Positions 22,560 through 62,179 of a DNA stretch of 64,000 nt are shown in pieces (the first letter of the stretch is position 1; the number at the start of each line of letters is the position of its first letter). The stretch lies in the IMG/VR virus record IMGVR_UViG_3300035698_010479, positions 62,001 through 126,000 of that record, one strand, 5' to 3'. The notes below the pieces were generated by a model. It did not search any database. It was not told where the DNA came from and saw nothing but the letters and a program-made list of their open reading frames with translations. A program made the position numbers and the translations under genes.

Positions 22560-23475
22560 ATGGCATAATTACTTGCTCAATAAGGTCATTGTGTTCATTG
22601 AAGAAACATTTACCTTCTTTACAGTTACAAGTATCAAAAGCGGTATCTTTTTTATATGTGTTCTCCCAAGTTTTAATTATATCATCAATATGACATAATG
22701 TAAAGTCAGAATTAAATTTTCTGTCAATTAGAGGGTTAGCACTACAATGATAGACATAGCCATCGGCATTAACAAATGGTTTTATTCTGCCCATCCAACA
22801 TTTATTTGGTACTGTATATTTCTTTTGTTGAAAAAAGAATTTTGGGTACTTATCTAAATAAGGTTGGATCATGTCTGTTGATTTATTTATGTCTTCAATA
22901 GATAGGCAATTAGGTACTATACGAACATAAGTAGCTTTATATTTATCTGCATATGCTGAAATTTTATCTAGCTGTTTTTCTGTTGATAAATCAGTAATTA
23001 CGTAAGAAAAACCTAAAACAACATTTGAAGGTATATTAATATCTATATCTTCAACGTAGTCTAAACTATTAAGACTTATTCTTAACCAAGTTAGTCTACT
23101 AAGATTTTTATAACTAACGTTATCTAGTTTTACACCATTAGTAATCATACCGATACCAGAGTAATTATAAGCAGCAAATTCTATAATATCATTAATGTGC
23201 TTATACATTGTTGGATCGCCTCCTCCGGTAAACTCAACAGTCTTTGCACCAAGAGTTTTAAAATCTGTAAGTACCTTGATAGACTGTTCTAAAGAAAGTT
23301 CATCAGCTTTATTTCGATTTGCTACAGAACACATTACGCAATTTAAATTACATTTATTAGTGGGGGCTAATTGAATACTGATAGGTCTAAAATAACCTTG
23401 CTGCATCTCCTTTAATCTATCCAGATTATGAAGTAATTTATTTTGTGTGCTTGTGTACAGCTGTTCTTTATTCAT
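22537..23475 (-). CDS. radical SAM protein with SPASM/twitch-like C-terminus
   Basis: CNLNCVMC, FTGGGDP, ITNG, CW...NADGYVYHC...CNCKEGKC. Confidence 0.9.
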   Translation of the reverse strand: MNKEQLYTSTQNKLLHNLDRLKEMQQGYFRPISIQLAPTNKCNLNCVMCSVANRNKADELSLEQSIKVLTDFKTLGAKTVEFTGGGDPTMYKHINDIIEFAAYNYSGIGMITNGVKLDNVSYKNLSRLTWLRISLNSLDYVEDIDINIPSNVVLGFSYVITDLSTEKQLDKISAYADKYKATYVRIVPNCLSIEDINKSTDMIQPYLDKYPKFFFQQKKYTVPNKCWMGRIKPFVNADGYVYHCSANPLIDRKFNSDFTLCHIDDIIKTWENTYKKDTAFDTCNCKEGKCFFNEHNDLIEQVIMPCGHSKFI

Positions 23476-24190
23476 ATATGTAATCCTCTATTAGTAAGTT
23501 TTTATTCCATTGTAAATTAGCGAAAGCCTTATCATGCCACTCATAACTGCAACAGGTACCCATGTCTCTTCCTCGATGGTTAGTTCTAGATAATGTAGGG
23601 AAAATTTCATAAAGATTTTCTTTCTTGCAATGAGCTGCAACAGCCCAATCCCACCCGTAAGAATTAAAGTACTCCTTAGCCAAATCATCATAGAACCAAT
23701 TAGGCTTAAATACCCTCTCGAAATTTTCACTAAATGTACACCAGCCTAATCCCGTAAAACTACCACATCTGGACACAAGTTTATTAGGTGTTACTAAGGT
23801 ACTATCATAATTAAATAAACCATAGCTATTGAATTTAAGTGGATCATTTTTAAAAGTCTTTCTGTAAAATTCGGCAAGTAATAGTGCATCTGGGCCAACA
23901 TGTAAATCATCATCCATATGACAATTAAAAGTACTACCTGAATTAAAAGCCAGTTCTACCGCTGAAAACTGATTTAATCTATGGTTTTTTCTTGTTTTAT
24001 TTACTTCAACTGTTATAGAAGCAAAACCGTAGTTACTGTTTTTTAAAACATTTTTTATTTCGTTTGTTTTTTCAGAAGGGTCTATACATATAAAAAAATG
24101 CCAATCACTAGTGTCACATTTAGCAATATCAATCAAGGTCTCTTGTAAATAATCTGGTCTGTTATAAGCAGTCATACTTAGTGTTTTCAT
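23468..24190 (-). CDS. GT-A fold glycosyltransferase (family 2-like)
   Basis: TAYNRPDYL, HMDDD (DxD), GLGW, GWDW. Confidence 0.78.
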   Translation of the reverse strand: MKTLSMTAYNRPDYLQETLIDIAKCDTSDWHFFICIDPSEKTNEIKNVLKNSNYGFASITVEVNKTRKNHRLNQFSAVELAFNSGSTFNCHMDDDLHVGPDALLLAEFYRKTFKNDPLKFNSYGLFNYDSTLVTPNKLVSRCGSFTGLGWCTFSENFERVFKPNWFYDDLAKEYFNSYGWDWAVAAHCKKENLYEIFPTLSRTNHRGRDMGTCCSYEWHDKAFANLQWNKNLLIEDYIYE

Positions 24191-24698: not shown

Positions 24699-25142
24699 TT
24701 ATTCACACCAGTTTTTTTCTTTTGTCCCACCATTATACTTAACGGCTAGGCCTTTGTCAAGTAAAATAGTAGCTAAGTCACCTTCGGCTGTTAAAACTTC
24801 TGCGACAATTCTAAAATATTTTCCTCGTCTAGTATTAAGAAGTGATACCTTGGTATGATCTCGCAGTATAACATATACAGCCTCTTTAGCCGCTAATGCA
24901 AGTTGATGCTCCTTTTCACATTTACTACGCATCTCAGGTGTATCAATACCAAATACACGTACTGATATTTTATAGCCAAATAACTCTGGTATGTCATTTA
25001 TATTTACAGTTAAAGTATCTCCATCATAATTACTAATAACTTCTACATCATAAAAATTTTCATATGTTTTTTCTGACGCATTACTATTATCATAACTACA
25101 AAAAGTACATAACAATAAAAATGATACTAATAGGCTTTTCAT
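24699..25142 (-). CDS. thermonuclease (SNase-like) with signal peptide
   Basis: YDGDT, VRVFGIDTPE, GKYFRIVA, GLAVKYNGG. Confidence 0.88.
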   Translation of the reverse strand: MKSLLVSFLLLCTFCSYDNSNASEKTYENFYDVEVISNYDGDTLTVNINDIPELFGYKISVRVFGIDTPEMRSKCEKEHQLALAAKEAVYVILRDHTKVSLLNTRRGKYFRIVAEVLTAEGDLATILLDKGLAVKYNGGTKEKNWCE

Positions 25143-49225: not shown

Positions 49226-49534
49226 TTAAAGTTCCATCAAGTCATCTTCAAGAGTTAAATCTTTAGCCTGTACAATTCCTCTATTAGATGTGTAAAACTT
49301 ATGATCTGGTGTACATTCTATAGAGAGCCCACTACCTAGGTTTAAGGTTAGTGTTTTTACAGGTATACCCGCTTCACGAGCAAACACATCCACTATTGGC
49401 TTTAATTCATCAAGATTAGTACTTGTATTTCTGGATAAAGCCATGAAATCTTCCCCATCTAAAATGCGCTTTATAATATCCTTAATCAGTATATTGCCTT
49501 TATCTGTAAGTATATGATTTTCATCAGTAAAACA
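49226..49534 (-). mobile_element. split intein N-terminal fragment (102 aa)
   Basis: Block A CFTDENHILT, block B IECTPDHKFYT, ending AKDLTLEDDLMEL-stop. Confidence 0.88.
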
Positions 49535-51588: not shown

Positions 51589-53523
51589 CTAATCTTGTTT
51601 AGCACCACATTTGGCACATACCAATTTAGTACCATAATGTTCATCATGTACAAATTCCATAATATTATGTCCACATTTTTTACCTTCTACCTCTTCATGT
51701 TCGCACTCATGCTTGATCCAACAAGGTCCAATAACTGGCGCTGTGTGCATAGGCATAACTGGAAAATAATGATTAAACGCGTCATCTACAGAGCTTACAA
51801 CAATTTTAGCTACCTCATCAGCGTACTTAATAGGGGCTTCAACTACAATTTCATCGTGTACAGATAGTAGTAATCTTGCACCAACATTAAGTTGCTCTAA
51901 CCTATCCACACATAAAATCATAGCTAATTTTATAGTGTCACTATCAGATCCCTGAATCTTATGATTCTTTGCAGCTCTTTCGACACCACCTACTATCTTC
52001 TTTCTAGCTGGGTCACTCATAGCTGGTATATTATAGAAACGATGCCTACCAGTTACTGTAGTACTACTATGATTACGCACAGCCTCTTTAGCGGCTTTAG
52101 TAAGCCATGTATTTAACACACTATTAATTCTAAAGTAGGCATCAATCAGTGCTTGAGCTTTTCCTTTTTCTATTTTTAACCTTTTACCTAAACCTACTGC
52201 TGATATACCGTAAGCTAATCCAAACGAAATTGCTTTTGATGCTTTTCTCTGGTCTGGTGTGACTTTATCATAAGGTACTTTAAATATACGTGCAGCATTT
52301 ACTGTATGTAGATCCAAACCTTTTTCATAGGTATCTAAGAAGTTAGGCTCCCCTGACATAGCACCCATAATAACTAATTCAGCAGAGTTCTGGTCAACGG
52401 TTATTAAACACATACCTGCGTCTGCTATAAAGCAAGACCTAAACTTCTGCTTACCTGGTATATTTTGTAAATTAGGGTTATTAGAGGATAGTCTACCTGT
52501 AGAAACCATTTGCTTAAATTGGGTATGTAATCTACCAGTTTTTGGATGAATACGGTCTATTAAAGCTTCACCGTAGGTATTTACAAGCTTAGCATTCTTC
52601 CTATAAGCTAACAAATCATCTATAATTGCATTTCCAGAATATCTTTTTAAAGCCTCACTTGCAGTGGACTCTACTTTAATGCCAAGTTTGTTAAGTGCTG
52701 ATTTAAGTTGAGCGGGGCTAGCAATATTGACAGTAGGCACATCAAATAAGGATAACTGGTCTTGTGTAACTTGAAGACTATCTTCAATATTTCGTTTGAA
52801 TCCAGCCAACTCTGTCGCGAATTCATCCATCATAGTACGCCATTTAGTTACATCTAATTTTACACCATTTAATTCCATTTCTACCAGAGGTTTTATAAAA
52901 GCCATCTCAAGCGACAATGCTTCCTGTAAATTATATTTAGTTATTCTAGGTAACTGCATACTTCTTATTATGTCTAAAATACAAACATCTATCGCAGCAT
53001 AGGCTATCTGTTTATCAGTATAATCCTGGTCGTATATTTCAAAAGTACCTCTAGGCTCTTTATTCATCAACATCCCAAGATACTTTTCAACTAATTTAGC
53101 TAAACTAAAACCAGATTCTTGTACACCTAGGTACATGAGGATCTCTGCCAACATGGTATCATACACATTTTCTATATAAAAACCATACTGTACTTTTAGC
53201 ACCTTCATGTCATAATTAGCATTTTGTAGTATCTTAAGATGTCGTTTACTTGTTAAAATATCTTTAAATAAGCTACCATGAATATCTATTCCTGGCAAAT
53301 CACTACGCACATCAAAGACGTATGCCATATTAGGAATACCAATTTGAATAAGTGTAGTTCTACATTTATACGGGTCTAAGCTAGTGCCTTCTGTATCTAC
53401 TTCTAAAACCGGTTGAGTATCTAAAAAAGCAAGTACTTCTTTAGCCCTATCAGCTCTTTTTATATATTCATAATTTGGAACAGGTAACTCAGGTAAGTCT
53501 ACAAATGCTGCTAAATTCGACAT
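51589..53523 (-). CDS. polA: family A DNA polymerase (3'-5' exonuclease plus polymerase; no 5'-3' exonuclease)
   Basis: VDTEG, NANYD, YAAID; TGRLSSNNPNLQNIP, motif A DQNSAEL, motif B RKASKAISFGLAYG, motif C VHDE. Confidence 0.95.
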   Translation of the reverse strand: MSNLAAFVDLPELPVPNYEYIKRADRAKEVLAFLDTQPVLEVDTEGTSLDPYKCRTTLIQIGIPNMAYVFDVRSDLPGIDIHGSLFKDILTSKRHLKILQNANYDMKVLKVQYGFYIENVYDTMLAEILMYLGVQESGFSLAKLVEKYLGMLMNKEPRGTFEIYDQDYTDKQIAYAAIDVCILDIIRSMQLPRITKYNLQEALSLEMAFIKPLVEMELNGVKLDVTKWRTMMDEFATELAGFKRNIEDSLQVTQDQLSLFDVPTVNIASPAQLKSALNKLGIKVESTASEALKRYSGNAIIDDLLAYRKNAKLVNTYGEALIDRIHPKTGRLHTQFKQMVSTGRLSSNNPNLQNIPGKQKFRSCFIADAGMCLITVDQNSAELVIMGAMSGEPNFLDTYEKGLDLHTVNAARIFKVPYDKVTPDQRKASKAISFGLAYGISAVGLGKRLKIEKGKAQALIDAYFRINSVLNTWLTKAAKEAVRNHSSTTVTGRHRFYNIPAMSDPARKKIVGGVERAAKNHKIQGSDSDTIKLAMILCVDRLEQLNVGARLLLSVHDEIVVEAPIKYADEVAKIVVSSVDDAFNHYFPVMPMHTAPVIGPCWIKHECEHEEVEGKKCGHNIMEFVHDEHYGTKLVCAKCGAKQD

Positions 53524-53524
53524 A

Positions 53525-54589
53525 TTAACTCCCTAATAAGGTTACAACTTTAAACATTATATTGTAAAATATATGTTCAGCAGGTTTGCCTGTTAAATAT
53601 ATTGGAGTAGTTAATTGAGTCAAGGCATTTGAAATACCTTTTCCGCTACTAAGAGTACTCCTTTTCAAGCAGCCTACAAAAAACCCACAAACAGCTACCC
53701 TAATACTTTCTACAGGGTACTTCTTAACAAGTTGCGCAAATAATAAACAAGCATTACTAAAATCACGTTTAATAAGTAACTTACTTAGATCCATTACTTC
53801 AGCATCATCCTCATCTAAAATAATACCAGTAAGTAGGCTTTTTATTTTAGATAGCTCCCAAGAGCCTTCTGTTATTACTGAATCTAAACAGTTTAAAGCC
53901 TTTCTAGGTACACCTAGAGATAAATCACAAATGTATTTTAGTATATCAACATTATAAGCAACACCTTCAAACTGAGCAACATTTTCCAACATCGACATAA
54001 TTTCTTCAGGTGATAATGCGGTTAGATTTAGTAATTTACATCTGTCTAGAAATGGGTCGTCATCTGACGATTTACTTGTAAGTTTTTCTGGTTCATTAGT
54101 ACAAAATATTACATAAACATGTGAATAGCAATCTTCCATTCTTTTTAGTAGCAACGCTTGAGCGGCTGGAGATAATCTATGTGCTTCATCAAAAATCAAT
54201 ACCTTATTTTTTGAACTAAATGGGGAGGAGGATAAGTCACTAACTATACCATCTACTGCGTCCTTACCACTACTGCTCCCAACATTTATTTCATGAACAT
54301 CAATACTATTTGAGTTAAGTATGGCAACGCACGAATCACATGTTAAACAAGGAATAGAATCTTTAGAGTGCTCACAATTTAAACTTAGCGCTAAAATTCT
54401 AGCTAAAGTAGTTTTACCTAAACCTGCATTGCCTGTTATTAGTAAAATATGTGGTAATGTACCTTTAGTTAGATAATTACTAATTAATGTTTTGACCGAG
54501 GGGCTGCCCAAAAATTCATCTATAGTACAAGGACGATATACTGTCAAAAAACTATTAGCTCCAGCTCTTGTTTCTCTTCTTATAAGCAT
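53525..54589 (-). CDS. dnaX: DNA polymerase III gamma/tau-like clamp-loader subunit
   Basis: YRP, GNAGLGKTT, CxxC Zn module, FDEAH, FCTNEP, RC, PRKA. Confidence 0.88.
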   Translation of the reverse strand: MLIRRETRAGANSFLTVYRPCTIDEFLGSPSVKTLISNYLTKGTLPHILLITGNAGLGKTTLARILALSLNCEHSKDSIPCLTCDSCVAILNSNSIDVHEINVGSSSGKDAVDGIVSDLSSSPFSSKNKVLIFDEAHRLSPAAQALLLKRMEDCYSHVYVIFCTNEPEKLTSKSSDDDPFLDRCKLLNLTALSPEEIMSMLENVAQFEGVAYNVDILKYICDLSLGVPRKALNCLDSVITEGSWELSKIKSLLTGIILDEDDAEVMDLSKLLIKRDFSNACLLFAQLVKKYPVESIRVAVCGFFVGCLKRSTLSSGKGISNALTQLTTPIYLTGKPAEHIFYNIMFKVVTLLGS

Positions 54590-55023
54590 AAATACTCCTT
54601 CCTATTTAAGTATAATTCAGTCAGTATACCATTTCCAGATGTAGTTTTAAACTTTTTAAATCCTAGATCCTTATTTGTACAAAAAGAGTTAGGTATCATT
54701 TGCATACAAGGGATATCGGAAATGGTGCTACCAATATAAGTAACATCCTCAGCAGTATAATTGTATTTTCGCAAAACGTCAAGCAAAATCTCTCTCTTAT
54801 TTTTTGATGCCCAATAAAAAGGAATACATCTTCTGGCGCATATGTTATAATTAACATTATTATCTGATGATAGAAACACGAAAGTATATTCAGATTTAAG
54901 TTTATTAATTGCTTCAAAATCACCAATATAAAAGTCTTTAAATAATGTTATGCCAATATTATCAATACAGCTTCTTCCAGGTGTTATTACTCCATCTATT
55001 TCTGAAACTATTATTTTAGTCAT
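54580..55023 (-). CDS. KdsC-like HAD phosphatase (first Asp replaced by Glu)
   Basis: IVSEIDGVIT, LSS, YIG...DIPCM. Confidence 0.72.
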   Translation of the reverse strand: MTKIIVSEIDGVITPGRSCIDNIGITLFKDFYIGDFEAINKLKSEYTFVFLSSDNNVNYNICARRCIPFYWASKNKREILLDVLRKYNYTAEDVTYIGSTISDIPCMQMIPNSFCTNKDLGFKKFKTTSGNGILTELYLNRKEYLCL

Positions 55024-55580
55024 TTTTTACCTACTATTAGTATATCGTGTGGGGTATTCATAAAACAACCTACAGGTGTTTTAATAAAATGTTTCACACT
55101 ACAATTTGAATTATTTATTATTGCTCGCCATAAACCTTCTGATCTATTTCTGGAATTATTATCAGTATAAGATGTATGAAGGTCACCAGAGATGATCATA
55201 AAGCCACCAGATTTAAGGTAAAGACATAAGTTCTCCAAAGATTTTTGCCATACATAATCATCAAGCTCGTAAGATAAACTATCTAATACATGTACTACAT
55301 CATATTGATTTATAAAAACTCCCATAGTGTCCTTTAAACTATTTTGTATGAGATCATAATTCATAGTACTAGTGAATTTACTATGCTGGTCACAAGTACT
55401 ATTTATACTAGTTACAAGAGGTGCTTGAATTATATCTAAGTAAAAATCTAACCAATGTGTATATGCAGTAGTGTCCAATACACATAAATCCTCTAAACTT
55501 GCATTGCAGTACTTATGTATCATTTTAAATATACAATTTTCTATAGTATTATTATGATAAGTATTAAACCATTTATTCAT
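55020..55580 (-). CDS. SAM-dependent methyltransferase-like protein
   Basis: YDVVHVLDSL, LKSGGFMIISG. Confidence 0.6.
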   Translation of the reverse strand: MNKWFNTYHNNTIENCIFKMIHKYCNASLEDLCVLDTTAYTHWLDFYLDIIQAPLVTSINSTCDQHSKFTSTMNYDLIQNSLKDTMGVFINQYDVVHVLDSLSYELDDYVWQKSLENLCLYLKSGGFMIISGDLHTSYTDNNSRNRSEGLWRAIINNSNCSVKHFIKTPVGCFMNTPHDILIVGKK

Positions 55581-55593
55581 TTAGACTCCGTGT

Positions 55594-55622
55594 ATAGTAA
55601 CATATAATTTTTTATAAAGCAA
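55594..55622 (-). promoter_or_regulatory. sigma70-type promoter
   Basis: TTGCTT-17-TACTAT on the - strand. Confidence 0.55.
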
Positions 55623-55746
55623 ATAAATAATTACTATATACTATATTTAATGTAGTATTAATAAGCTGTACAAGCGGCATAGTAGTAAATTAATTTAATA
55701 TATAGTAGTATGTATGTAGTGGTATAAAAATGCAGTACAGCTCAAT

Positions 55747-56247
55747 TTAAGATGTTTTAGAACCTAGTTGCTTAACTACCTTTAATACAAAATTTGAATG
55801 TACACTTTCAGTAGTAACTAAACTTAAGCCAACGTCCCCACATAGTATCTGTAACCAGGCAGTGTCAAACATTACATAATGGAAGTTTCCTGGGTAGTCC
55901 TGACCACCAAACATATGATAAGAAACAAACTTAGCATCTTTATTATCTTTGTAATGTGTAAGAGCCCAATGCATATCTGGTGTACGTATCTCCAAAATAC
56001 CATCAACTTTAAGCACCCTACACCATTCTTTAAGTATACCTATGGTTTTTGATATAGGAAAGTGTTCAATAATATCACTAGCTAGTATATAATCAAAATG
56101 ATTATCTTCAAATGGTATTTTTTCAGCAGGGCCAACTAAATCAACTATGGTTAAATCAGCCCTCTCATCATAATTTATACATTCATACCCTTTTGGATAC
56201 TCAAGGTACGTTCTATCACCACAACCAATATTCAATGTTAATTTCAA
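55747..56247 (-). CDS. class I methyltransferase (type 11)
   Basis: LNIGCG, IPFEDNHFD, DIIEHF, RVLKVDG, TPD. Confidence 0.85.
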   Translation of the reverse strand: MKLTLNIGCGDRTYLEYPKGYECINYDERADLTIVDLVGPAEKIPFEDNHFDYILASDIIEHFPISKTIGILKEWCRVLKVDGILEIRTPDMHWALTHYKDNKDAKFVSYHMFGGQDYPGNFHYVMFDTAWLQILCGDVGLSLVTTESVHSNFVLKVVKQLGSKTS

Positions 56248-56269
56248 TGTTTCCCCTTAATTAATTATT

Positions 56270-57385
56270 TTAAAGTAACTCTAAAAATAACTTACCAATA
56301 ACTTCCGATGAAAAATTATCCATCAGATTACTACGTAGTAAATCTCCTCTTGACTGGGCATCTTCGTAATTATTATACACATACCTAGCTAATAGCGCAC
56401 CGTGCGTAGGAGAAGCTTCAGCCCAATTCATGCTACCAAGATACCAAGGCGAGAAAGGCATACCAGACACAGGTGTCTCTACATAATCAACAAGGTAGCT
56501 ATTATCCTCTGTCAAATATTGACTAACACCTCCAAAACCAGTAGCTATTACAGGATTACCAGAGGCGCCAGCATTAGCTGTACTCATGCCCCAACCCTCT
56601 CCTCTGTCCAGGGTAATATAACAGTCGCACCTTTTATGTAATGCTGTAATTTCTTCCTCGCTTAACATGTCCAATATCAAGTAAATTGGGGGGTACTTTG
56701 GTAAAACAATCATCTGTTTTAGTCTTTTTATTGTCGATCTAATAGCATCCCTTTCAGGGTTACTGTAGTTACTACCGTATGTTTTTAAAACTAAGGCTAC
56801 ATTTTCGTCCTCTTGAAAAGCTGTCCAGAAAGCTTTTATAGTGGACAATGGGTTTTTTCGTTCTGTCCATTGATTTATATTATAAAATAAAAACTTATTA
56901 GGGTCTTCGATACTTAATACTGTACTACAATCTTCATTTTTATCAGGATTGAATAAATCAACTACGTGTGGCACAACATAAATAGGTATAGTAACACCAC
57001 TAGACTCAAATACATCTTTATTCCATTTACATGGTACAAATACTTTGTCTACTGTTGTATTTATGTACTCTGGCCAAGATGGGTGTAAACTATCAGTCTC
57101 CCAAACTGTGTAACCAACGTTAAACTTACTCTCCTCACGATAAGACTTCCAGAATTCAGGTGTGGTATGTATAACAACCGTATTATATTGAATATCTTTA
57201 TTAATTAGTGATAATATAATTTCAGAATCTTCACCTAAATCAGGCTTAGCTTCTTCAAATGATATAGGGCTTACTGTGAGTGGTATACCTTGTTTATGTA
57301 ATGCTATTATATAACCACGTGCAGCTTTTGCATACCCAGAATTATCCAAGCATGGTGCTATATATTTAATACCTGTGATTTTCAT
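56270..57385 (-). CDS. GT-B glycosyltransferase (family 4-like)
   Basis: SGYAKAA, YTVWET, ERKN, EGWGMSTANAGASG, ATGFGG. Confidence 0.88.
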   Translation of the reverse strand: MKITGIKYIAPCLDNSGYAKAARGYIIALHKQGIPLTVSPISFEEAKPDLGEDSEIILSLINKDIQYNTVVIHTTPEFWKSYREESKFNVGYTVWETDSLHPSWPEYINTTVDKVFVPCKWNKDVFESSGVTIPIYVVPHVVDLFNPDKNEDCSTVLSIEDPNKFLFYNINQWTERKNPLSTIKAFWTAFQEDENVALVLKTYGSNYSNPERDAIRSTIKRLKQMIVLPKYPPIYLILDMLSEEEITALHKRCDCYITLDRGEGWGMSTANAGASGNPVIATGFGGVSQYLTEDNSYLVDYVETPVSGMPFSPWYLGSMNWAEASPTHGALLARYVYNNYEDAQSRGDLLRSNLMDNFSSEVIGKLFLELL

Positions 57386-57390
57386 AATAA

Positions 57391-57777
57391 TTAAATCCCC
57401 CTCTTATAAAATTTACGTAATACGTAATCTGTAGGTGACACAACACAGCTATAATTAAGTGTATTGATATTAAAAACCCCAACCTGTTCATCTGTTCTAG
57501 ATACTGCTCTATGAATACCGCTTGTTTTTATAGTAAAAAAATCTACACTAAAGTGGTTATTATCAGAGTAGTTGTCAAACAGTTGCCAATTATACAGTAC
57601 TAAACCACACTCCTCTTCACATTCGCGTACCATAGCCTCATAAGAAGTTTCATTTTCTTCTATTTTTCCACCCACACCGTTAAGCTTACCTAACTGCCAA
57701 ATAGGTCTCTGTTTCCTAATAAGTAATGTGTTTTCATGAGTGTCATCAAAAATAATACCTACTACATATTTAATCAT
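57391..57777 (-). CDS. NUDIX hydrolase
   Basis: GGKIEENETSYEAMVRECEEECG Nudix box. Confidence 0.92.
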   Translation of the reverse strand: MIKYVVGIIFDDTHENTLLIRKQRPIWQLGKLNGVGGKIEENETSYEAMVRECEEECGLVLYNWQLFDNYSDNNHFSVDFFTIKTSGIHRAVSRTDEQVGVFNINTLNYSCVVSPTDYVLRKFYKRGI

Positions 57778-57780
57778 GCG

Positions 57781-58257
57781 CTACCCCTTCCTATGATAAA
57801 TTCTAAAGTCTAATACCCCACTAACAGTGCTACTATTTAATTCCCATATATTCGCATCTACCCCGTGCCAGTATATGTCACCGGTATATTCAGCGTCAAT
57901 TCTAGTAATATCTAAAATATTAGCATAGTCTATATAGGCATTAAATATCTCAGCACCACCTATAACATATATATTAGTATAGTCTTTGAATTTTGTCAAC
58001 ACATATTTTAGATGATCAAATACAAAGGCCTTACCTTCTGTGTAAAAAGTTAGGTCGCGTGTAAGAACCACATTAGGTCTATTAGGTAAAGGTTTTATAG
58101 ATATGGACTCCCAGGTTCTTCTGCCCATTACTACGGGATATCCAGTAGTAATTTTTTTAAATCTTTTAACATCCTCTGGGTGGTGCCACGGTATAGCGTT
58201 TGCACAACCCATTAAATTATTTTTATCTAGTGCTACTAAAAATATAACTTTTGGCAT
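57781..58257 (-). CDS. folA: dihydrofolate reductase
   Basis: IPWH, VMGRRTWESI, LPNRPNVVLT, IGGAEI. Confidence 0.95.
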   Translation of the reverse strand: MPKVIFLVALDKNNLMGCANAIPWHHPEDVKRFKKITTGYPVVMGRRTWESISIKPLPNRPNVVLTRDLTFYTEGKAFVFDHLKYVLTKFKDYTNIYVIGGAEIFNAYIDYANILDITRIDAEYTGDIYWHGVDANIWELNSSTVSGVLDFRIYHRKG

Positions 58258-58265
58258 AAATTACC

Positions 58266-59132
58266 TTAAACAGCTATGGGCGCTTTAATACCTGGGTGGT
58301 ATTTATAACCCTGTAGAGAAGAGTCTGTGTAAACCCAGTCAAAAATAGACGTAAAATTATTAGTAGTTATATCAGGTAGAGGGTATGGTTCCCTAGTTAA
58401 CTGGGTAGCTACTTGAGATAAATGTGTTGTATATAAATGTACATCTCCTAAAAAACCGCATAAATAACCTTCAGCTAATTTACATTCTTTTGCCAATAGG
58501 TGCAGTAATAATGCATAACTAGTGATATTAAATGGTAGACCAAGGAAAGAATCTACACTTCGTTGATTCCACATTAAGTTTAATTTACCATCTATAACAG
58601 TGCATTGAAAAGACCAATGACATGGTGGTAAAGCCATACGGTAATTATCTATTGGGTTCCATGCTACAACCAACATCCTTCTACTATCTGGGTCAGACTT
58701 CAATGTATCTACTAAATTTTTAAACTGATCGATACCGACGTTAGTGTAGTCTGAATACTCATTAGTATATGCCCCGCCAAAATGCCTCCACTGCCAGCCA
58801 TATAATGGTCCTAAACAGTTTTCATCACGCATCTTTTGTTGTTCAGTGATGTCATGACTATAAGGAATTTTATCTGAAGAGCACCACTCATCCCAAATAT
58901 GATTATTACGTTCATGAAGCCAGTGCTTATCTGTAATACCTTTTATAAAAAATTCTAATTCGGAGGCTACTAAGTTGAAAGGTACTCTTTTAGTAGTTAC
59001 AACTGGAAATCCTTCAGACATATTGTGCTTAAAAAGAACACCAGAGGTTGCCAAGGTACCAGTGCCTGTTCTATCTTGTTTATTAAAACCATTATCTAAT
59101 ATATCTTGTAGTATATTTAAATATTTATACAT
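58266..59132 (-). CDS. thyA: thymidylate synthase
   Basis: DRTGTG, GPLYGWQWR, ALPPCH, QRSVDSFLGLPFN, DVHLY. Confidence 0.96.
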   Translation of the reverse strand: MYKYLNILQDILDNGFNKQDRTGTGTLATSGVLFKHNMSEGFPVVTTKRVPFNLVASELEFFIKGITDKHWLHERNNHIWDEWCSSDKIPYSHDITEQQKMRDENCLGPLYGWQWRHFGGAYTNEYSDYTNVGIDQFKNLVDTLKSDPDSRRMLVVAWNPIDNYRMALPPCHWSFQCTVIDGKLNLMWNQRSVDSFLGLPFNITSYALLLHLLAKECKLAEGYLCGFLGDVHLYTTHLSQVATQLTREPYPLPDITTNNFTSIFDWVYTDSSLQGYKYHPGIKAPIAV

Positions 59133-59153
59133 AAGTACCCCTTAATATGGTTA

Positions 59154-59193
59154 GGCTACTTAGGCTATTGTAAATATAATTGCCTAAGTAGCC
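59154..59193. terminator. terminator hairpin
   Basis: 12-bp inverted repeat GGCTACTTAGGC / GCCTAAGTAGCC. Confidence 0.7.
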
Positions 59194-59203
59194 AGTAATA
59201 AAT

Positions 59204-60472
59204 TTATAGTTGTTCTACTTTAATAGAATTAGCTTTCTGTTTGTACACACTAGATGCACTTAATTTTTCAACTTCCTTGTCAAACACTGCTAACCATTGA
59301 TTAGCAATCTTTCCAGACCACTGCATATCAGATTTAACCCAGTTATATGCATTATCGGCTTTAACTTTTGCCTCTTGATAGTTGTCATAAACATAACACA
59401 TCTTACTAACAAGATCGTCAACATCTACCAATGGTCTAGGTATATCATTATCATTTGGTAGAGCAGTCCATAAACTAGAGTTGTTACCACTTTCTGCAAG
59501 AAAGCCGCAATCTTTAGATATAAGTTCAGCCATTGCGGTATTGTTTGGCATTATTGTAGGTGTTTTACAAGCCATAGCTTCCAACCAACTTATACCAAAG
59601 CCCTCACCTAAAGTAGTACTAATAACACAATCACAACTATTGTACAGGTAATTGATTACATCTAGTGGAAACCCTTGGTTAGGTTCCATCTTATCGGGCA
59701 GAACAACATCTCTACCTAATTGAACACCCATCTCAGTCAAAAGCTTTGGTATATTCCACCCTTGGTCTATCGCGCACATATGTAGATATAGCATTGATTC
59801 TGGAACCATCTTTTTAAATTCCTTGAAAGCCTGAATAGTCCTTGGTATGTCTTTTCTTTGTTGATTCCTATTAATATTCATAAAAATAAATCTATCCTTA
59901 CCAATAGAAAAATAAGATTCTCTAAATTTTTTAATTTCCATAGCGTCCAATGGTTTAAACAATGACATATCAACACCATGATGTATAACAGCTACATCAG
60001 ATTTCAAATCTTTAGTGTATTTAAGTAGCGCGGTTTTCCCGAATTCAGTATAGGCAACTAATTTATCTACCTGGGCTATGTTAGCACACCACTCTTCACG
60101 CAATATACTATCTACTGGAAAGTACATTACTGTTCTAAAAGATTTAACTCTATTATTTTTTAGATGTTTAATTAGTTCAGGTACAAAATCTACTATAAAA
60201 GTATCTTGTAATATCCATAATATATCAAAGTCATGTTCAAGTGCAAAGTAACAGAATTTTCTTCGACCATAGGGATCTCCAGTTTGGTGGTCTGCGGCTG
60301 GCCAAATCCTATAAGGTAGTGTATGGGGCTCTCCATGATAGTTTATACCAAAGATATCTACTTCATACTTACCACTTGCATGAAGTTGTGCCAATACATT
60401 TCTTGACACAGTGCCAAAACCTGTAGCTACTGTTGGACTATCACAGTAAGCCAAAATCTTTATTTTTTTCAT
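59204..60472 (-). CDS. GT-B glycosyltransferase (family 4-like)
   Basis: TGFGTVS, HGVD, NRNQQRK, GEGFGISWLEAMAC. Confidence 0.9.
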   Translation of the reverse strand: MKKIKILAYCDSPTVATGFGTVSRNVLAQLHASGKYEVDIFGINYHGEPHTLPYRIWPAADHQTGDPYGRRKFCYFALEHDFDILWILQDTFIVDFVPELIKHLKNNRVKSFRTVMYFPVDSILREEWCANIAQVDKLVAYTEFGKTALLKYTKDLKSDVAVIHHGVDMSLFKPLDAMEIKKFRESYFSIGKDRFIFMNINRNQQRKDIPRTIQAFKEFKKMVPESMLYLHMCAIDQGWNIPKLLTEMGVQLGRDVVLPDKMEPNQGFPLDVINYLYNSCDCVISTTLGEGFGISWLEAMACKTPTIMPNNTAMAELISKDCGFLAESGNNSSLWTALPNDNDIPRPLVDVDDLVSKMCYVYDNYQEAKVKADNAYNWVKSDMQWSGKIANQWLAVFDKEVEKLSASSVYKQKANSIKVEQL

Positions 60473-60477
60473 AAATC

Positions 60478-61662
60478 TTATTCCTCTTTAGTTTTTGTTT
60501 TAGCAACCTTAAGCTTACGTGTAGCTAAAAATGCGCTATTGAAATTTGTCTCACTTATATCATCCATTATAGGTAATATACTTGGGTTCTTATCTAAATA
60601 TTTTTTTAGCTTTGTAGGTGAAACCGTGACTAAAGTAGCAAAATCTTCCTTTGTTATAAAAGTACTTAACTTCTCAGCATTATAAGAAGTCCTAGAATTC
60701 TGCCTTAACACCATCTCTTGTTCACCAGATATCACAGATTTCTCCTGTATTTTTATTTTTTCAATAAGTACAGTAGCTATCTCACGTTCTCTCATATCTA
60801 ATATCTTCTGACTTGTTCTCACCATATCCCATTCATTTATTAAAGCTTCATCTGATAATGTTTGTACGTTTAAAAAAGCAAATTCTTTTTTTACACATAA
60901 TTCCTGATACTTTTCGCATACATTTGTATAGTCACACCAAGCGCAAAGAAAATTTATAGAGGGTTTTGCAGCCTCTTTTGTCAAAGCCGATATTTCCTTA
61001 TGTATAGCTGCTAGATAATCTTCAAACTCGTCCAGTTCTTCATCTGTCCTATATGTGTATACAAGGTCCCCAGATCGTAACATATCTAAACATAATATTA
61101 CTCTACTGTATTGAGGGTATAATTTTCTGGCAACTAAGTTATACATAGATAACTGTATATCAGAACTTAATTTATTAGCATCAGGGACTGTTTTAGACGT
61201 TTTATAGTCTACAATTAATAACGTGTCTGGATTTACCTCAACGGATTTATCTATGGCACCTATTAGTTCTATACCATCCTTGGTTGTTATTGTTTGTGTA
61301 CCTTCAAAACCAAATCTGTCCTCTATACCAATGATTGACTCTCCAATCTTGAAACGTTTCAGTCTAGCCTTAACAATATCTTTACCTACTAAATGTTCTG
61401 AGTAGTCCTCTATACCGTGCTTTACTGAAGCTTCATCATAATAAGATAATAAATCTTTGATTTGTTGATTACTAAATTTTAATAAAGCCTGCTCTTTCCA
61501 TAATCTTCCTGCCTTTTCCAAAGTGTCATGACAAGCTAAACCTAGTTTAAACACTGGATTAGCTAGTTTTTCAAGATGCTCTTCGTAAGAAAACCAGTAC
61601 CTAAGTTTACATTGCAAAAATGTGTTTATTCTAGTAGCACTTAATTTAATCGTTTTTTTCAC
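60478..61662 (-). CDS. Cas4/RecB-like PD-(D/E)xK exonuclease
   Basis: LSATRINTFLQC, GAID, VDYKT, QLSMY, CAWCDYTNVC (four-Cys Fe-S pattern); probable GTG start 61662. Confidence 0.88.
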   Translation of the reverse strand: MKKTIKLSATRINTFLQCKLRYWFSYEEHLEKLANPVFKLGLACHDTLEKAGRLWKEQALLKFSNQQIKDLLSYYDEASVKHGIEDYSEHLVGKDIVKARLKRFKIGESIIGIEDRFGFEGTQTITTKDGIELIGAIDKSVEVNPDTLLIVDYKTSKTVPDANKLSSDIQLSMYNLVARKLYPQYSRVILCLDMLRSGDLVYTYRTDEELDEFEDYLAAIHKEISALTKEAAKPSINFLCAWCDYTNVCEKYQELCVKKEFAFLNVQTLSDEALINEWDMVRTSQKILDMREREIATVLIEKIKIQEKSVISGEQEMVLRQNSRTSYNAEKLSTFITKEDFATLVTVSPTKLKKYLDKNPSILPIMDDISETNFNSAFLATRKLKVAKTKTKEE

Positions 61663-62179
61663 TTGTTTCTCCCATATAAAGATAGCCATAATCCTTAGGA
61701 TATCTATATTTATATTTTTCCAACACCTCATCCGCGTAATATAATAACTGTGACTGTGCATCTATTATATCATTATCCTTTTTAAATGTCAAGTTATCTA
61801 TATCTAATAAATAACATACAAAATAAAAAAGATCCTCTTTTGTACGGGCAGCGAAATATGATTTAACTTTAGTGTTAGTGACTATAAATGGATCTATTTC
61901 TAAAATTTTCATACAGGTATACTTTGCTACACCTGCAAATTCACTTAATATTTTTAATGTACTAATATTAGCTCCTGAAAAAGTATCTTCTTGAACAATA
62001 AATTCTGGTTTGAATTTAAGTAGTACTATCTCTAAATCTCTACTAAATAACAGTAGTCTAGCGGATCTTTGTAGTTTAGGACTTGTAACAATAACCCCCT
62101 TAATAAAAGTTTTGCCATCACTTGTAAAACACCAACCAGTACAAGACGCTGACACGTCTAGACTTAATATGCTACACAT
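61646..62179 (-). CDS. ruvC: RuvC-like Holliday junction resolvase
   Basis: LSLDVS..TGW, VQED, DIIDA. Confidence 0.75.

What the first reader, a model, noticed from the sequence alone, without database searches (positions are those of the whole stretch)
54580..60472. Two GT-B glycosyltransferases, two methyltransferases, a KdsC-like phosphatase and a NUDIX embedded in the replication operon
Seen: these genes are interleaved with folA, thyA, dnaX and polA. ThyA keeps the canonical PFN asparagine, so it appears dUMP-specific and not a hydroxymethylase. Inference: a DNA or nucleotide glycosylation and methylation pathway whose acceptor base is not evident from this window, suggesting an uncharacterised hypermodification.
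Basis: inference. Interest (0 to 1): 0.6.

Follow-up and report, generated by a model that had tools for sequence, protein, structure and literature searches.

The report
Conserved phage glycan cassette, target unknown
An uncultured salt-lake jumbo phage carries a conserved set of soluble sugar-transferring and methylating enzymes inside its early replication-gene block; the genes are real, but nothing in the genome shows DNA is their target, and decoration of phage proteins is at least as likely.

Summary
On the minus strand of window 54580-60472 lie two GT4 (GT-B) glycosyltransferases, a Methyltransf_11 methyltransferase, a second methyltransferase-fold protein, a KdsC-like HAD protein and a NUDIX. 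They are interleaved with thyA and folA and flanked by a PD-(D/E)XK exonuclease, the clamp loader and PolA.

The window is part of a 228-kb IMG/VR phage record. At least 12 related contigs keep the order exonuclease / GT422 / GT371 / methyltransferase. The slot between the two GTs varies: ThyA, a second ThyA type, ThyX, a short ThyA-like protein, or nothing. So thyA-folA-nudix is an insert, not part of the pathway.

The DNA-hypermodification reading is not supported by any test I could run:
- ThyA is a canonical dTMP synthase (L143/C146/D169/N177).
- The genome has no second ThyA homologue, TET/JBP, other 2OG oxygenase, C5-methyltransferase, TGT or Mom.
- The GTs show no profile similarity to T4 alpha- or beta-GT.

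Both GTs are closest to chlorovirus GT B736L. All cassette proteins are soluble. Relatives expand the cassette to 5-7 GTs plus sulfotransferase, epimerases and FkbM methyltransferases.

Best reading (0.4): cytoplasmic assembly of a methylated oligosaccharide on a phage protein, probably a virion protein. DNA glycosylation at an unknown acceptor remains the main rival (0.25).

The parts
61764..61792 (-). Perfect sigma-70-type promoter (TTGACA-17-TATAAT with TG) heading the transcription unit that holds the cassette
   Evidence: 5 perfect matches in the window against 0.17 expected, all on the gene strand; 6 in the whole genome, all at 74.9-132 kb and none in the structural block. Its -10 box ends 3 nt before the listed ATG of the exonuclease ORF, so the true start is probably further downstream (inference).
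60478..61761 (-). PD-(D/E)XK exonuclease; conserved upstream boundary of the cassette
   Evidence: PF12705 94.6 bits, phrog_69. Immediately upstream of GT422 in every relative examined.
59204..60472 (-). GT422: soluble GT4 (GT-B, retaining-type EX7E) glycosyltransferase; conserved first enzyme of the cassette
   Evidence: Pfam and PHROG. AF2 pLDDT 90.5. Foldseek top hit 3oy2 (chlorovirus B736L) E 1e-23. Profile against PDB: 3oy2 E 6.7e-17 over full length. E290 and E298 invariant in 48 homologues. 992 homologues found, the best 120 all at least 51 % identical. No TM segment.
58266..59132 (-). ThyA, canonical thymidylate synthase; an insert between the two GTs, not part of the glycan pathway
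   Evidence: TIGR03284 296.8 bits. 259 bits to bacterial TS 7ta9. L143/C146/D169/N177 and a full C-terminal tail. The slot holds ThyX, another ThyA type, a short ThyA-like protein or nothing in relatives.
57781..58257 (-). Dihydrofolate reductase (insert; partner of ThyA)
   Evidence: PF00186 146 bits. Present only in relatives that carry a ThyA-type TS in the slot, that is the window phage and L004/L005.
57391..57777 (-). MutT-like NUDIX hydrolase (variable insert; role open)
   Evidence: PF00293 42.5 bits. Best NCBIfam hit is MutT at 34 bits, below its cut-off. Present in L004-L006, absent from L010, L011, L012 and L014-L018.
56270..57385 (-). GT371: second soluble GT4 glycosyltransferase, conserved partner of GT422
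   Evidence: Pfam and PHROG. 26 % identical to GT422 over 194 aa. Best PDB sequence hit is again B736L, E 4.3e-8. 46-78 % identical orthologues in relatives. pI 4.9, no TM segment.
55747..56247 (-). MT166: small class-I SAM methyltransferase (Methyltransf_11), conserved third member of the cassette core
   Evidence: PF08241 40.1 bits. No DNA-methyltransferase family matched. Orthologues follow GT371 in all relatives.
55020..55580 (-). unk186: methyltransferase-fold protein with a degenerate SAM motif I; lineage-specific
   Evidence: No family hit. Only 6 homologues in 5.8 billion proteins. AF2 pLDDT 73.6; Foldseek hits to class-I N- and O-methyltransferases at E about 1e-6. Alignment.
54580..55023 (-). 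HAD147: KdsC-fold HAD protein with Glu in place of the nucleophilic Asp
   Evidence: TIGR01670 34.4 bits (cut-off 107). Profile against KdsC 1j8d E 2.4e-8. Motif I reads ExDGV and is invariant in 5 orthologues.
53525..54589 (-). Clamp-loader (DnaX-like) ATPase; downstream boundary of the cassette in the relatives whose fetched contig reaches that far
   Evidence: PF13177 92.3 bits, phrog_5846. Synteny: follows the HAD protein in L004-L006, L010 and L011; the more distant loci L012 and L014-L018 end before this point.
51589..53523 (-). Family-A DNA polymerase with 3'-5' exonuclease (context)
   Evidence: PF00476 285.9 bits, PF01612 86.8 bits.
24732..24760 (-). Second perfect sigma-70-type promoter, heading the second glyco-related island
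23468..24190 (-). GT-A-fold (GNT-I/MGAT2/GT2-like) glycosyltransferase, probable third GT of the pathway
   Evidence: Atlas: feature score 0.98, TM 0.84-0.93 to viral GT2/GNT-I clusters. Weak PF00535 hit. 35.5 % identical over full length to a gene inside the cassette of relative L012.
22537..23475 (-). Radical-SAM enzyme next to the GT-A gene (role unknown)
   Evidence: PF04055 49 bits. N-terminal similarity to MoaA and viperin-type families, far below their cut-offs.
21942..22559 (-). Methyltransf_23 methyltransferase next to the radical-SAM gene
   Evidence: PF13489 35.3 bits, phrog_27380.

Best explanation
The locus is a clade-conserved, early-transcribed, entirely soluble glycan-assembly module. 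Its core is GT422, then GT371, then a small SAM methyltransferase. In this phage it also has a methyltransferase-fold protein and a KdsC-fold protein with an altered nucleophile. A GT-A transferase, a radical-SAM enzyme and a further methyltransferase encoded 30 kb away probably belong to it too.

A thyA-folA-nudix nucleotide-metabolism insert sits between the two GTs and is not functionally linked to them.

Proposed mechanism (inferred):
1. GT422, the slowly evolving enzyme, puts the first sugar on a conserved cytoplasmic acceptor, possibly from a GDP-sugar as in its chlorovirus homologue.
2. GT371, and the GT-A enzyme, extend the chain.
3. The methyltransferases O-methylate it.

I take the acceptor most likely to be a phage protein, probably a virion protein. 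Chloroviruses and some actinophages do this with their own soluble GT and methyltransferase sets.

Shown: gene identities, solubility, synteny, the variable slot, canonical ThyA, and absence of known base-hydroxylating enzymes. Inferred: donor, order of action and the acceptor.
For: (1) Both GTs are closest to chlorovirus B736L.
- GT422: Foldseek E 1e-23 against 5e-17 for the next hit. Profile E 6.7e-17 over full length, while all other PDB hits cover only the C-domain at E 4e-8 or worse.
- GT371: best PDB sequence hit is again B736L, E 4.3e-8.
- Chlorovirus GTs are soluble and early-expressed, and the viruses glycosylate their capsid protein in the cytoplasm with methylated sugars. B736L's own acceptor is unknown.
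- The BFVD neighbours are giant-virus, archaeal-virus and uncultured-phage GT4s, FkbM-fused GTs and the Arthrobacter phage Kitkat GT. No T-even DNA GT is in the top 50.

(2) No cassette protein in the window, L010, L012 or L014 has a convincing TM segment. No flippase, polymerase or lipid-carrier enzyme is present.

(3) Relatives expand the same locus to 5-7 GTs (GT2, GT9, GT17, GT32-like, GT-D). They add Epimerase_2, GDP-mannose dehydratase and epimerase, sulfotransferases, hexapeptide acetyltransferases, a PIG-L deacetylase and FkbM-type methyltransferases. That means a large, variable, tailored oligosaccharide.

(4) The nearest cultured-phage homologues of GT422 lie with another GT and/or a SAM methyltransferase. 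In Synechococcus S-CBS4 they sit between portal and head protease. In Tetrasphaera TJE1 they sit before the terminase, with NDP-sugar genes.

(5) Protein acceptors need no extra enzyme. A DNA acceptor would need one, and none is found.

(6) The surrounding early block is not purely about DNA. DnaJ lies two genes upstream, and DnaK and ClpB are in the same block.

(7) Virion glycosylation by phage GTs is established in mycobacteriophages Che8, Corndog and Myrna (summarised in PMC12363180).
Against: - The cassette is fixed between replisome genes in every relative and is driven by the same consensus sigma-70 promoters as the replication genes. It is 13 kb or more from the structural block and about 85 kb from the terminase.
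- T4 places its DNA glucosyltransferases in exactly this kind of neighbourhood.
- GT4-like GT-B enzymes resembling BshA and MshA are proven DNA glycosyltransferases in other phages.
- B736L's acceptor is unknown, and the NY-2A capsid glycan lacks mannose.
- No glycosylated protein has been identified, and no acceptor can be named from sequence.
Confidence: 0.4

Rival explanations
1. DNA hypermodification. GT422 and GT371, with the GT-A enzyme, glycosylate a base in phage DNA and the methyltransferases methylate the sugar. The acceptor hydroxyl would be made by an enzyme of a kind not yet recognised, because the known routes are absent.
For: - Fixed position between the exonuclease and the clamp loader/PolA, co-transcribed from a consensus early-type promoter.
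- T4 b-gt lies next to gene 42 and the polymerase and clamp-loader genes; a-gt lies next to 46/47.
- Proven phage DNA GTs include GT-B enzymes resembling BshA and MshA, with HAD, epimerase and cytidylyltransferase helpers and Kdo or heptose donors.
- GT422 is as conserved as the replisome proteins. In one relative it carries an intein inside its EX7E motif.
- Two relatives (L014, L018) have, in the slot next to GT422, a short ThyA-like protein with Asp at position 143 and Asn at 177. L010 and L012 carry a zinc-finger/Vsr-like protein in the cassette; in L012 it has a Mom-family domain.
Against: - ThyA is a canonical TS with adjacent DHFR; ThyX replaces it in relatives.
- There is only one ThyA-family gene. 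No Tet_JBP, three other 2OG-oxygenase families, C5- or N4/N6-methyltransferase, TGT or Mom was found in the 86 %-complete genome; the oxygenase and ThyA searches on six related records found nothing further.
- hhalign probability is about 1 % against T4 a-gt and b-gt. No DNA GT is among the top 50 structural neighbours.
- GT371 is acidic, pI 4.9.
- Cassettes with 5-7 GTs and sulfotransferases exceed any DNA glycan described; tri-saccharides are the largest.
- The Asp-143 lead is not diagnostic. These short proteins score best to methanogen-type TS, and a virus-encoded member of that type also has an acidic residue there.
Confidence: 0.25
2. Host-directed glycosylation. The early-made GTs modify a host molecule at the cytoplasmic face: a lipid-linked envelope precursor, a glycolipid or a host protein. 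The purpose would be takeover or superinfection exclusion.
For: - Early-type promoters.
- GT4 relatives include WaaG, PimA, lipid glucosyltransferases and BshA.
- Large cyanomyoviruses with many GTs are usually read as cell-surface modifiers.
- The cassette varies between relatives, as expected for host-glycan matching.
Against: - No membrane-spanning or lipid-carrier enzymes, flippase or ligase.
- GT422 is conserved at 50 % or more across about a thousand phage proteins with a fixed genomic position. That is untypical of host-range morons.
- The closest homologues are viral, not cellular.
Confidence: 0.12
3. Small-molecule product. A GT4 enzyme acts on a phosphorylated acceptor and a HAD phosphatase then removes the phosphate, as in sucrose-phosphate, glucosylglycerate or mycothiol-type pathways. 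Alternatively, the product is a free methylated oligosaccharide.
For: - Structural neighbours include sucrose-phosphate synthase, GlgM, MshA, BshA and the methylmannose-polysaccharide mannosyltransferase.
- A GT4 gene with a HAD-fold gene and methyltransferases in one operon.
- Salt-lake origin, where compatible solutes matter.
Against: - The HAD protein has Glu at the nucleophile position in all orthologues and is missing from several relatives.
- Multi-GT expansions do not fit a simple solute.
- There is no acceptor-synthesis gene.
Confidence: 0.08

Closest known systems
Chlorovirus GT4 glycosyltransferase B736L (NY-2A; PDB 3OY2/3OY7) / PBCV-1 A546L, and the chlorovirus cytoplasmic capsid-glycosylation machinery
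   Same: - Best solved homologue of both GTs, full length for GT422.
- Soluble, virus-encoded, accompanied by methyltransferases, expressed early.
- GDP-mannose dehydratase occurs in a relative's cassette, and B736L binds GDP-mannose.
   Different: - Only about 20 % identity.
- B736L's acceptor and activity are unknown.
- The host is eukaryotic.
- The chlorovirus genes are not placed in a replisome operon.
T4 alpha- and beta-glucosyltransferases (CAZy GT72/GT63, family numbers from memory) acting on 5-hydroxymethylcytosine DNA
   Same: GT-B fold. The genes are interleaved with polymerase, clamp-loader and nuclease genes and lie next to a ThyA-family gene.
   Different: - No profile similarity and not among the structural top hits.
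- T4's neighbouring ThyA homologue is a dCMP hydroxymethylase (D143/D177). Here it is a canonical TS.
Metavirome GT-B DNA glycosyltransferases of C5-MT/5mYOX or ThyS clusters (Pyle et al., bioRxiv 10.1101/2023.12.21.572611)
   Same: BshA/MshA-like GT-B fold. Helper genes such as HAD, epimerase and a second GT. Frequent adjacency to a ThyS gene and to polymerase and clamp genes.
   Different: - Those pathways depend on 5hmC made by a methyltransferase plus dioxygenase, or on a hydroxymethylase. None is present here.
- Their products are mono- to tri-saccharides.
5-hydroxycytosine arabinosylation of RB69/DLP3 and hexosylation in RL38J1 (Lee et al., NAR 2026, PMC13326640)
   Same: A ThyA homologue next to GTs within the replication region, with NDP-sugar helper genes.
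   Different: The 5hodCMP synthases carry N177D, L143E and the diagnostic D169N. The window ThyA has N177, L143 and D169.
Mycobacteriophage virion glycosylation cassettes (Che8, Corndog, Myrna; Freeman et al. 2023, seen only through PMC12363180)
   Same: Phage-encoded soluble GTs that decorate capsid and tail proteins. The weak GT4 hits in Arthrobacter, Rhodococcus and Streptomyces phages lie in the early part of those records (5-20 kb), where actinophage structural genes usually lie (placement from memory).
   Different: Only 21-29 % identity to those actinophage GTs. Those cassettes are sporadic accessory genes, whereas GT422 looks like a core gene of its clade at a fixed replisome site. I could not read the paper itself.
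KdsC (Kdo-8-phosphate phosphatase, HAD subfamily IIIA)
   Same: HAD147 aligns over about 135 residues. Motifs II-IV are recognisable.
   Different: Scores are far below family cut-offs. The nucleophilic Asp is replaced by Glu in all orthologues. No KdsA, KdsB or KdsD gene is visible in the cassette.

Membership tests
CAZy GT4-type retaining GT-B glycosyltransferases (Pfam Glycos_transf_1) | Pfam Glycos_transf_1 above the gathering score | tested here: met
   GT422 47.7 bits and GT371 33.4 bits, against a cut-off of 26.4.
CAZy GT4-type retaining GT-B glycosyltransferases (Pfam Glycos_transf_1) | Two-Rossmann-domain GT-B fold | tested here: met
   GT422 AF2 model pLDDT 90.5. TM 0.66-0.80 to B736L, BshA, MshA and PimA. 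GT371 was not modelled.
CAZy GT4-type retaining GT-B glycosyltransferases (Pfam Glycos_transf_1) | EX7E motif in the C-terminal domain | tested here: met
   E290 and E298 invariant in 48 GT422 homologues.
T-even phage DNA glucosyltransferases (alpha-GT, beta-GT) | Sequence or profile homology to T4 a-gt or b-gt | tested here: not met
   hhalign of the 48-sequence GT422 profile: probability 1.3 % and 1.1 %.
T-even phage DNA glucosyltransferases (alpha-GT, beta-GT) | Partner dCMP hydroxymethylase (ThyA homologue with Asp at 177 and an acidic 143) | tested here: not met
   Window ThyA has N177 and L143; the T4 gp42 control gives D177 and D143. There is only one ThyA-family gene in the genome.
Phage base-hypermodification gene clusters with glycosylation (5hmC, 5hmU or 5hoC routes) | An enzyme that makes the acceptor hydroxyl: hydroxymethylase, 5hodCMP synthase (D169N), or C5-MT plus TET/JBP dioxygenase | tested here: not met
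   Caveats: the genome is 86 % complete, and only known families can be found this way.
Phage base-hypermodification gene clusters with glycosylation (5hmC, 5hmU or 5hoC routes) | GT genes clustered with DNA-replication and nucleotide-metabolism genes | tested here: met
Phage base-hypermodification gene clusters with glycosylation (5hmC, 5hmU or 5hoC routes) | Sugar-modified nucleoside in virion DNA | not testable with these tools
   The public runs that hold the sequence are kept as contigs only.
Virus-encoded cytoplasmic glycosylation of virion proteins (chlorovirus or actinophage type) | Soluble virus-encoded GTs without lipid-carrier or flippase machinery, accompanied by sugar methyltransferases | tested here: met
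   Comparison.
Virus-encoded cytoplasmic glycosylation of virion proteins (chlorovirus or actinophage type) | Homology to a GT of such a virus | tested here: met
   B736L at E 6.7e-17 over full length. However, B736L's own acceptor is unproven.
Virus-encoded cytoplasmic glycosylation of virion proteins (chlorovirus or actinophage type) | Glycan found on a capsid or tail protein | not testable with these tools
   Needs virions. No sequence signature of acceptor sites is known.
Thymidylate synthase ThyA (EC 2.1.1.45) | Equivalog score plus active-site residues L143, C146, D169 and N177 and the C-terminal closing segment | tested here: met
   TIGR03284 296.8 bits against a cut-off of 108. Residues and the 86-residue tail after N177. 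Adjacent DHFR.
KdsC / HAD-IIIA phosphatases | Family score above cut-off | tested here: not met
   TIGR01670 34.4 bits against 106.95; PF00702 18.8 bits against 26.4.
KdsC / HAD-IIIA phosphatases | DxD motif with a nucleophilic Asp | tested here: not met
   ExDGV in all five orthologues, aligned to DVDGV of KdsC 1j8d.
Class-I SAM methyltransferases | Family score and glycine-rich motif I | tested here: met
   MT166: PF08241 40.1 bits; its N-terminus reads IGCGD.
Class-I SAM methyltransferases | The same features, for the 186-aa protein | tested here: inconclusive
   Fold match only. No family score. Motif I has no glycines.
DNA methyltransferases (for the two 'methyltransferases' of the finding) | Match to N6/N4, D12 or C5 DNA-methyltransferase families | tested here: not met
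   The genome's only match is a Dam-type enzyme elsewhere, at window 45261-46100. MT166 matches small-molecule-type families only.
Wzx/Wzy- or ABC-type surface-polysaccharide pathways | Initiating phosphoglycosyl transferase, flippase or polymerase, TM proteins | tested here: not met
   No TM segments in cassette proteins, and no such Pfam families in eight cassettes.

The most novel reading that the evidence does not exclude
The cassette glycosylates phage DNA at an acceptor created by chemistry not yet known for DNA. Examples would be a radical-SAM or other unrecognised enzyme functionalising thymine or a purine, or a Mom-like adduct in relatives. The result would be a methylated (in relatives also sulfated) oligosaccharide on DNA in a large, environmentally widespread jumbo-phage clade.
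Probability: 0.2. Interest if true: 0.85.

Novelty: new variant of a known kind. Interest (0 to 1): 0.45.

Why it matters
1. About a thousand metagenomic proteins at 50 % identity or more belong to the GT422 family, and the larger contigs carrying it reach 60-275 kb. Whatever the acceptor is, this is a core trait of a big uncultured phage clade.

2. Metavirome mining has used GT-plus-ThyS adjacency as an indicator of pre-replicative DNA hypermodification. This locus shows the adjacency can be to a canonical TS that is interchangeable with ThyX. Residue-level typing of the ThyA homologue is therefore needed before calling a hypermodification.

3. If the acceptor is a virion protein, it extends virus-encoded, cytoplasmic, chlorovirus-like glycosylation to tailed jumbo phages of saline waters.

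4. If the acceptor is DNA, the acceptor chemistry would be new.

Tried and rejected
- Restriction-site (palindrome) avoidance as a proxy for unmodified DNA. The genome avoids GATC (0.65), CATG and several 6-mers. The first 50 kb of T4, whose DNA is glucosylated, shows equal or stronger avoidance. The test does not discriminate and I dropped it.
- Public sequencing runs. Eight salt-lake metagenome runs hold parts of the stretch, but all are kept as contigs, which cannot show base modification. I therefore did not use read laying.
- Asp at ThyA position 143 in the short ThyA-like proteins of relatives L014 and L018, as a mark of a dUMP hydroxymethylase. This is weakened: the proteins score best to methanogen-type TS, and the Methanobacterium virus PhiF1 member of that type has Glu there. 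I keep it as a lead only.
- PF20706 'GT4-conflict' on GT422. The score is 26.0 bits at a cut-off of 26 and lies under stronger general GT1 hits. It is not informative about the acceptor.
- Charge heuristics. GT422's N-domain has pI 7.7 and GT371 has pI 4.9, against T4 b-gt at 9.0 and a-gt at 6.1. This is too ambiguous to use beyond a minor point.
- A Ser-rich protein as candidate acceptor (G000:C1:4625-6325). It has a lipoprotein-type signal peptide and so is probably exported. It is not a natural substrate for cytoplasmic GTs.
- Expression timing. Consensus sigma-70 promoters mark the block as early or middle. However, chlorovirus capsid-glycan GTs are also early genes, so timing does not decide.
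- Methyltransferases next to GT422 homologues in TJE1 and S-CBS4 are not detectably homologous to MT166 or unk186 by tblastn.
- The Freeman et al. 2023 paper could not be fetched.
- The large representative-protein search, complex prediction and any alternative genetic code were not used.

Full report
**What the window is.** The window is bases 62001-126000 of a 228,458-bp IMG/VR viral record, classed as linear and 86 % complete. It has no near relative among 50,697 deposited phage genomes by megablast. Its PolA is at most about 31 % identical to any of them. Public runs that hold the stretch are salt-lake metagenomes. Packaging and tail genes lie elsewhere on the record: a 7,473-aa ORF with a tape-measure domain at 171.8-194.2 kb and a large terminase at 207.9-210.9 kb.

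| Gene | Window coordinates | Evidence |
|---|---|---|
| PD-(D/E)XK exonuclease | 60478-61761 | |
| GT422 | 59204-60472 | |
| ThyA | 58266-59132 | |
| DHFR | 57781-58257 | |
| NUDIX | 57391-57777 | |
| GT371 | 56270-57385 | |
| MT166 | 55747-56247 | |
| 186-aa protein (unk186) | 55020-55580 | see below |
| 147-aa HAD protein (HAD147) | 54580-55023 | see below |
| Clamp loader | 53525-54589 | |
| PolA | 51589-53523 | |

- The two GTs are distant paralogues, 26 % identical over 194 residues.
- The 186-aa protein has no family match and only six homologues in the 5.8-billion-protein collection.
- Its AlphaFold model (pLDDT 73.6) matches class-I SAM methyltransferases at Foldseek E about 1e-6.
- The HAD protein aligns to KdsC structures (E 2.4e-8 with a five-sequence profile). 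It scores far below the KdsC cut-off.
- It carries Glu instead of the nucleophilic Asp of the DxD motif in all five orthologues aligned. It is KdsC-like in fold, but its phosphatase activity is doubtful.

**ThyA.** The window ThyA scores 296.8 bits to the ThyA equivalog (cut-off 108) and 259 bits to a bacterial TS structure.
- I used the active-site positions that Lee et al. (PMC13326640) give as diagnostic: 143 separates methyl from hydroxymethyl products, 169 marks 5-hydroxy-dCMP synthases, and 177 separates dUMP from dCMP.
- The window enzyme reads L143/C146/D169/N177 and keeps the long C-terminal closing segment. The T4 gp42 control reads D143/D169/D177, as expected for a dCMP hydroxymethylase.
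- With DHFR adjacent, this is an ordinary dTMP cycle. The added residues also exclude the hydroxymethylase and hydroxylase types.

**Comparative context.** GT422 has 992 detected homologues. The best 120 are all at least 51 % identical, many on contigs of 60-275 kb. I examined related contigs.
- In all of them the order exonuclease / GT422 / [slot] / GT371 / Methyltransf_11 is kept (two short contigs end before GT371). Where the contig reaches far enough (L004-L006, L010, L011), the clamp loader follows.
- DnaJ, RuvC, primase, DnaB, RecA and the beta clamp lie upstream.
- The slot between the two GTs holds one of the following:
  - ThyA-DHFR-NUDIX (window phage).
  - A 28 %-identical second ThyA type with DHFR and NUDIX (L004/5).
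  - ThyX (L006, L011, L012; TIGR02170 186.7 bits).
  - A diverged ThyX-like protein (L009, L010, L016).
  - A short ThyA-like protein (L014, L018).
  - Nothing at all (L017).
- Thymidylate synthesis is thus a replaceable insert between two GT genes that belong together. The 'interleaving' is not evidence of a shared pathway.

**How the cassette varies downstream.** Downstream of the methyltransferase the cassette is highly variable.
- The window phage has only unk186 and HAD147.
- Relatives add GT2, GT9, GT17, GT32-like and GT-D transferases.
- They also add UDP-GlcNAc-2-epimerase-type and GDP-mannose-dehydratase-type enzymes, sulfotransferases, hexapeptide acetyltransferases, a PIG-L deacetylase and FkbM methyltransferases.
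- One gene inside the L012 cassette is 35.5 % identical over its full length to window ORF 23468-24190. The ESM Atlas places that ORF among viral GT-A (GNT-I/MGAT2/GT2-like) transferases.
- In the window that ORF sits next to a radical-SAM enzyme and a Methyltransf_23 protein, behind its own promoter. The pathway in this phage is therefore probably split over two islands.

**Tests of the DNA reading.**
1. Acceptor supply. In the own genome I found no second ThyA-family gene, Tet_JBP, 2OG-FeII_Oxy_2/3/5, C5 or N4/N6 DNA methyltransferase, TGT or Mom family member. The Tet_JBP, three 2OG-oxygenase and ThyA-family searches were also run on six related records; they found nothing beyond the start of a thyA-type gene at the cut end of one short contig. 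A Dam-type methyltransferase exists at window 45261-46100.
2. Similarity to DNA GTs. A 48-sequence GT422 profile shows no relation to T4 a-gt or b-gt (hhalign probability about 1 %). No DNA GT appears among the top 50 structural neighbours in the PDB or in BFVD.
3. Neighbourhood. The T4 map shows b-gt next to gene 42, the polymerase and clamp loader, and a-gt next to 46/47. The style of placement is therefore compatible with a DNA function.
4. Published DNA GTs. Those of the GT-B type resemble BshA and MshA and work with HAD, epimerase and cytidylyltransferase helpers. They depend on 5hmC, and their products are at most trisaccharides.
5. Restriction-site avoidance turned out to be uninformative once T4 was used as a control.

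**Tests of the alternative.**
- The GT422 model (pLDDT 90.5) is closest to the chlorovirus NY-2A glycosyltransferase B736L. Foldseek gives E 1e-23 against 5e-17 for BshA.
- By profile against all PDB sequences, B736L is the only full-length hit (6.7e-17; others cover the C-domain only, at 4e-8 or worse).
- GT371's best PDB sequence hit is the same protein.
- According to the reviews read, B736L is 81 % identical to PBCV-1 A546L and binds GDP-mannose. Its acceptor is unknown.
- Chloroviruses glycosylate their capsid protein in the cytoplasm with their own soluble, early-expressed GTs and methyltransferases.
- No cassette protein in four phages has a convincing TM segment, and no lipid-carrier machinery is present.
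- The nearest cultured-phage homologues of GT422 lie among head and packaging genes, next to another GT and/or a methyltransferase.
- Virion glycosylation by phage GTs is established in mycobacteriophages.

**Regulation.** Six perfect TTGACA-17-TATAAT promoters occur in the genome (0.17 expected per window).
- All lie on the gene strand, 3-101 nt upstream of ORFs.
- All fall within 74.9-132 kb, the block that holds the replication, nucleotide, chaperone and GT genes. None lies in the structural block.
- One lies directly upstream of the exonuclease-GT422 unit and one upstream of the GT-A island.
- The cassette is thus probably made early by host RNA polymerase. Chlorovirus capsid-glycan GTs are also early, so this does not decide between the readings.

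**Verdict.** The gene content is confirmed. 'A glycosylation and methylation pathway' is supported. 'Acting on DNA' is an inference from neighbourhood that fails every direct test available here, yet cannot be excluded.
- I commit to cytoplasmic assembly of a methylated oligosaccharide on a phage protein, probably a virion protein, at 0.4.
- DNA glycosylation at an unknown acceptor is at 0.25.
- Host-directed glycosylation is at 0.12.
- A small-molecule product is at 0.08.
- The remainder is unassigned.

**Leads that favour DNA and deserve follow-up.**
- The short ThyA-like proteins with D143/N177 next to GT422 in L014 and L018 are ambiguous. Methanogen-type TS, their best family, also has an acidic residue at 143.
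- The zinc-finger/Vsr-like protein inside the L010 and L012 cassettes, which in L012 carries a Mom-family domain.
- An RlmN/Cfr-like radical-SAM protein next to GT422 in L014.

Noticed in passing
outside the window: G000:C1:171769-194190 (-), loci L020/L021: A single 7,473-aa ORF with a PhageMin_Tail (tape-measure) domain at residues 3505-3698. If it is a tape measure, the usual length rule (about 0.15 nm per residue, from memory) implies a tail about 1 micrometre long, which would be extraordinary for a phage. Neighbouring ORFs of 2,272 aa (with a galactose-binding-like domain) and 1,844 aa.
   Followed up: partly
L011:9524-11944 (relative), and protein P0024: The GT422 orthologue carries a 383-residue intein with a LAGLIDADG endonuclease. 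It is inserted between residues 294 and 295, inside the catalytic EX7E motif, with Ser at +1. An intein in a glycosyltransferase is unusual (from memory). It is consistent with the strong conservation of this site across the family.
   Followed up: yes
window 12896-12924, 17627-17655, 24732-24760, 31076-31104, 61764-61792 (all -); plus G000:C1:131940-131968: Six perfect sigma-70 consensus promoters (TTGACA-17-TATAAT), confined to the 74.9-132 kb block of the genome and absent from the structural block. This points to a host with canonical sigma-70 promoters and marks an early or middle transcription block.
   Followed up: yes
window 46421-50482 (-): The ribonucleotide reductase large subunit is split. 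The N-part ORF 49226-50482 ends in an intein-splicing domain. A 342-aa ORF without family match (48135-49163) follows. The C-part ORF 46421-48148 has a TSCPD domain. It looks like an intein-containing or intein-disrupted nrd gene.
   Followed up: no
window 31353-33209, 62172-62936, 14752-16695 (all -): The phage encodes a full-length DnaK/Hsp70 (780 bits), a DnaJ with zinc-finger domain and a ClpB-like AAA+ protein. That is a complete chaperone set in the same early block as the replisome.
   Followed up: no
window 44497-46100 (-): A Dam-type (D12) N6-adenine DNA methyltransferase (45261-46100, 188.9 bits), directly followed by a DUF6996/DUF6997 protein (44497-45282) and a radical-SAM-like Fe-S protein (43096-44046). 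GATC is under-represented (0.65).
   Followed up: partly
L014:12986-13690 and L018:10307-10990 (relatives): Short ThyA-like proteins (234 and 227 aa) lie in the slot next to GT422. They have Asp at position 143 and Asn at 177 and lack the TS C-terminal tail. Their best family is methanogen-type TS, below its cut-off. They could be an archaeal-type TS or a dUMP hydroxymethylase.
   Followed up: partly
L012:14056-15654 and L010:13096-14502 (relatives): A 468-532-aa protein sits inside the cassette, between GT371 and the methyltransferase; the two copies are 55 % identical. In L012 it has a treble-clef zinc finger, a Vsr-like endonuclease region and a Mom-family domain (38 bits, cut-off 27). In L010 Pfam finds the zinc finger and a CapR domain. 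It may be a mobile endonuclease or a DNA-modifying enzyme.
   Followed up: no
L014:11401-12375 (relative); window 1960-2748 (+): An RlmN/Cfr-like radical-SAM methyltransferase (69.7 bits to the RlmN model, N-terminal part) lies immediately after GT422 in L014. A 26 %-identical homologue exists in the window on the plus strand.
   Followed up: no
outside the window: G000:C1:207928-210942 (-): The large terminase subunit is 1,004 aa. The terminase matches cover only residues about 500-950, and an endonuclease-like region and an unknown PHROG lie in the N-terminal half.
   Followed up: no
outside the window: G000:C1:4625-6325 (+): A 566-aa protein with a lipoprotein-type signal peptide, a 50-residue Ser/Lys-rich linker and a C-terminal domain that by eye resembles a periplasmic solute-binding protein (my impression, not tested).
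   Followed up: partly
window 61646-62179 and 60478-61761 (-): The listed exonuclease ORF overlaps the RuvC ORF by 116 nt. Its ATG lies 3 nt after the -10 box of a perfect promoter. Orthologues are 385-407 aa against 427 aa here. The real start is probably about 20 codons downstream.
   Followed up: partly
window 21364-21666 (-): A MazG-like NTP pyrophosphatase lies directly downstream of the GT-A / radical-SAM / methyltransferase island. Together with the NUDIX and the dUTPase (50494-50958), the phage has three NTP pyrophosphatases.
   Followed up: no
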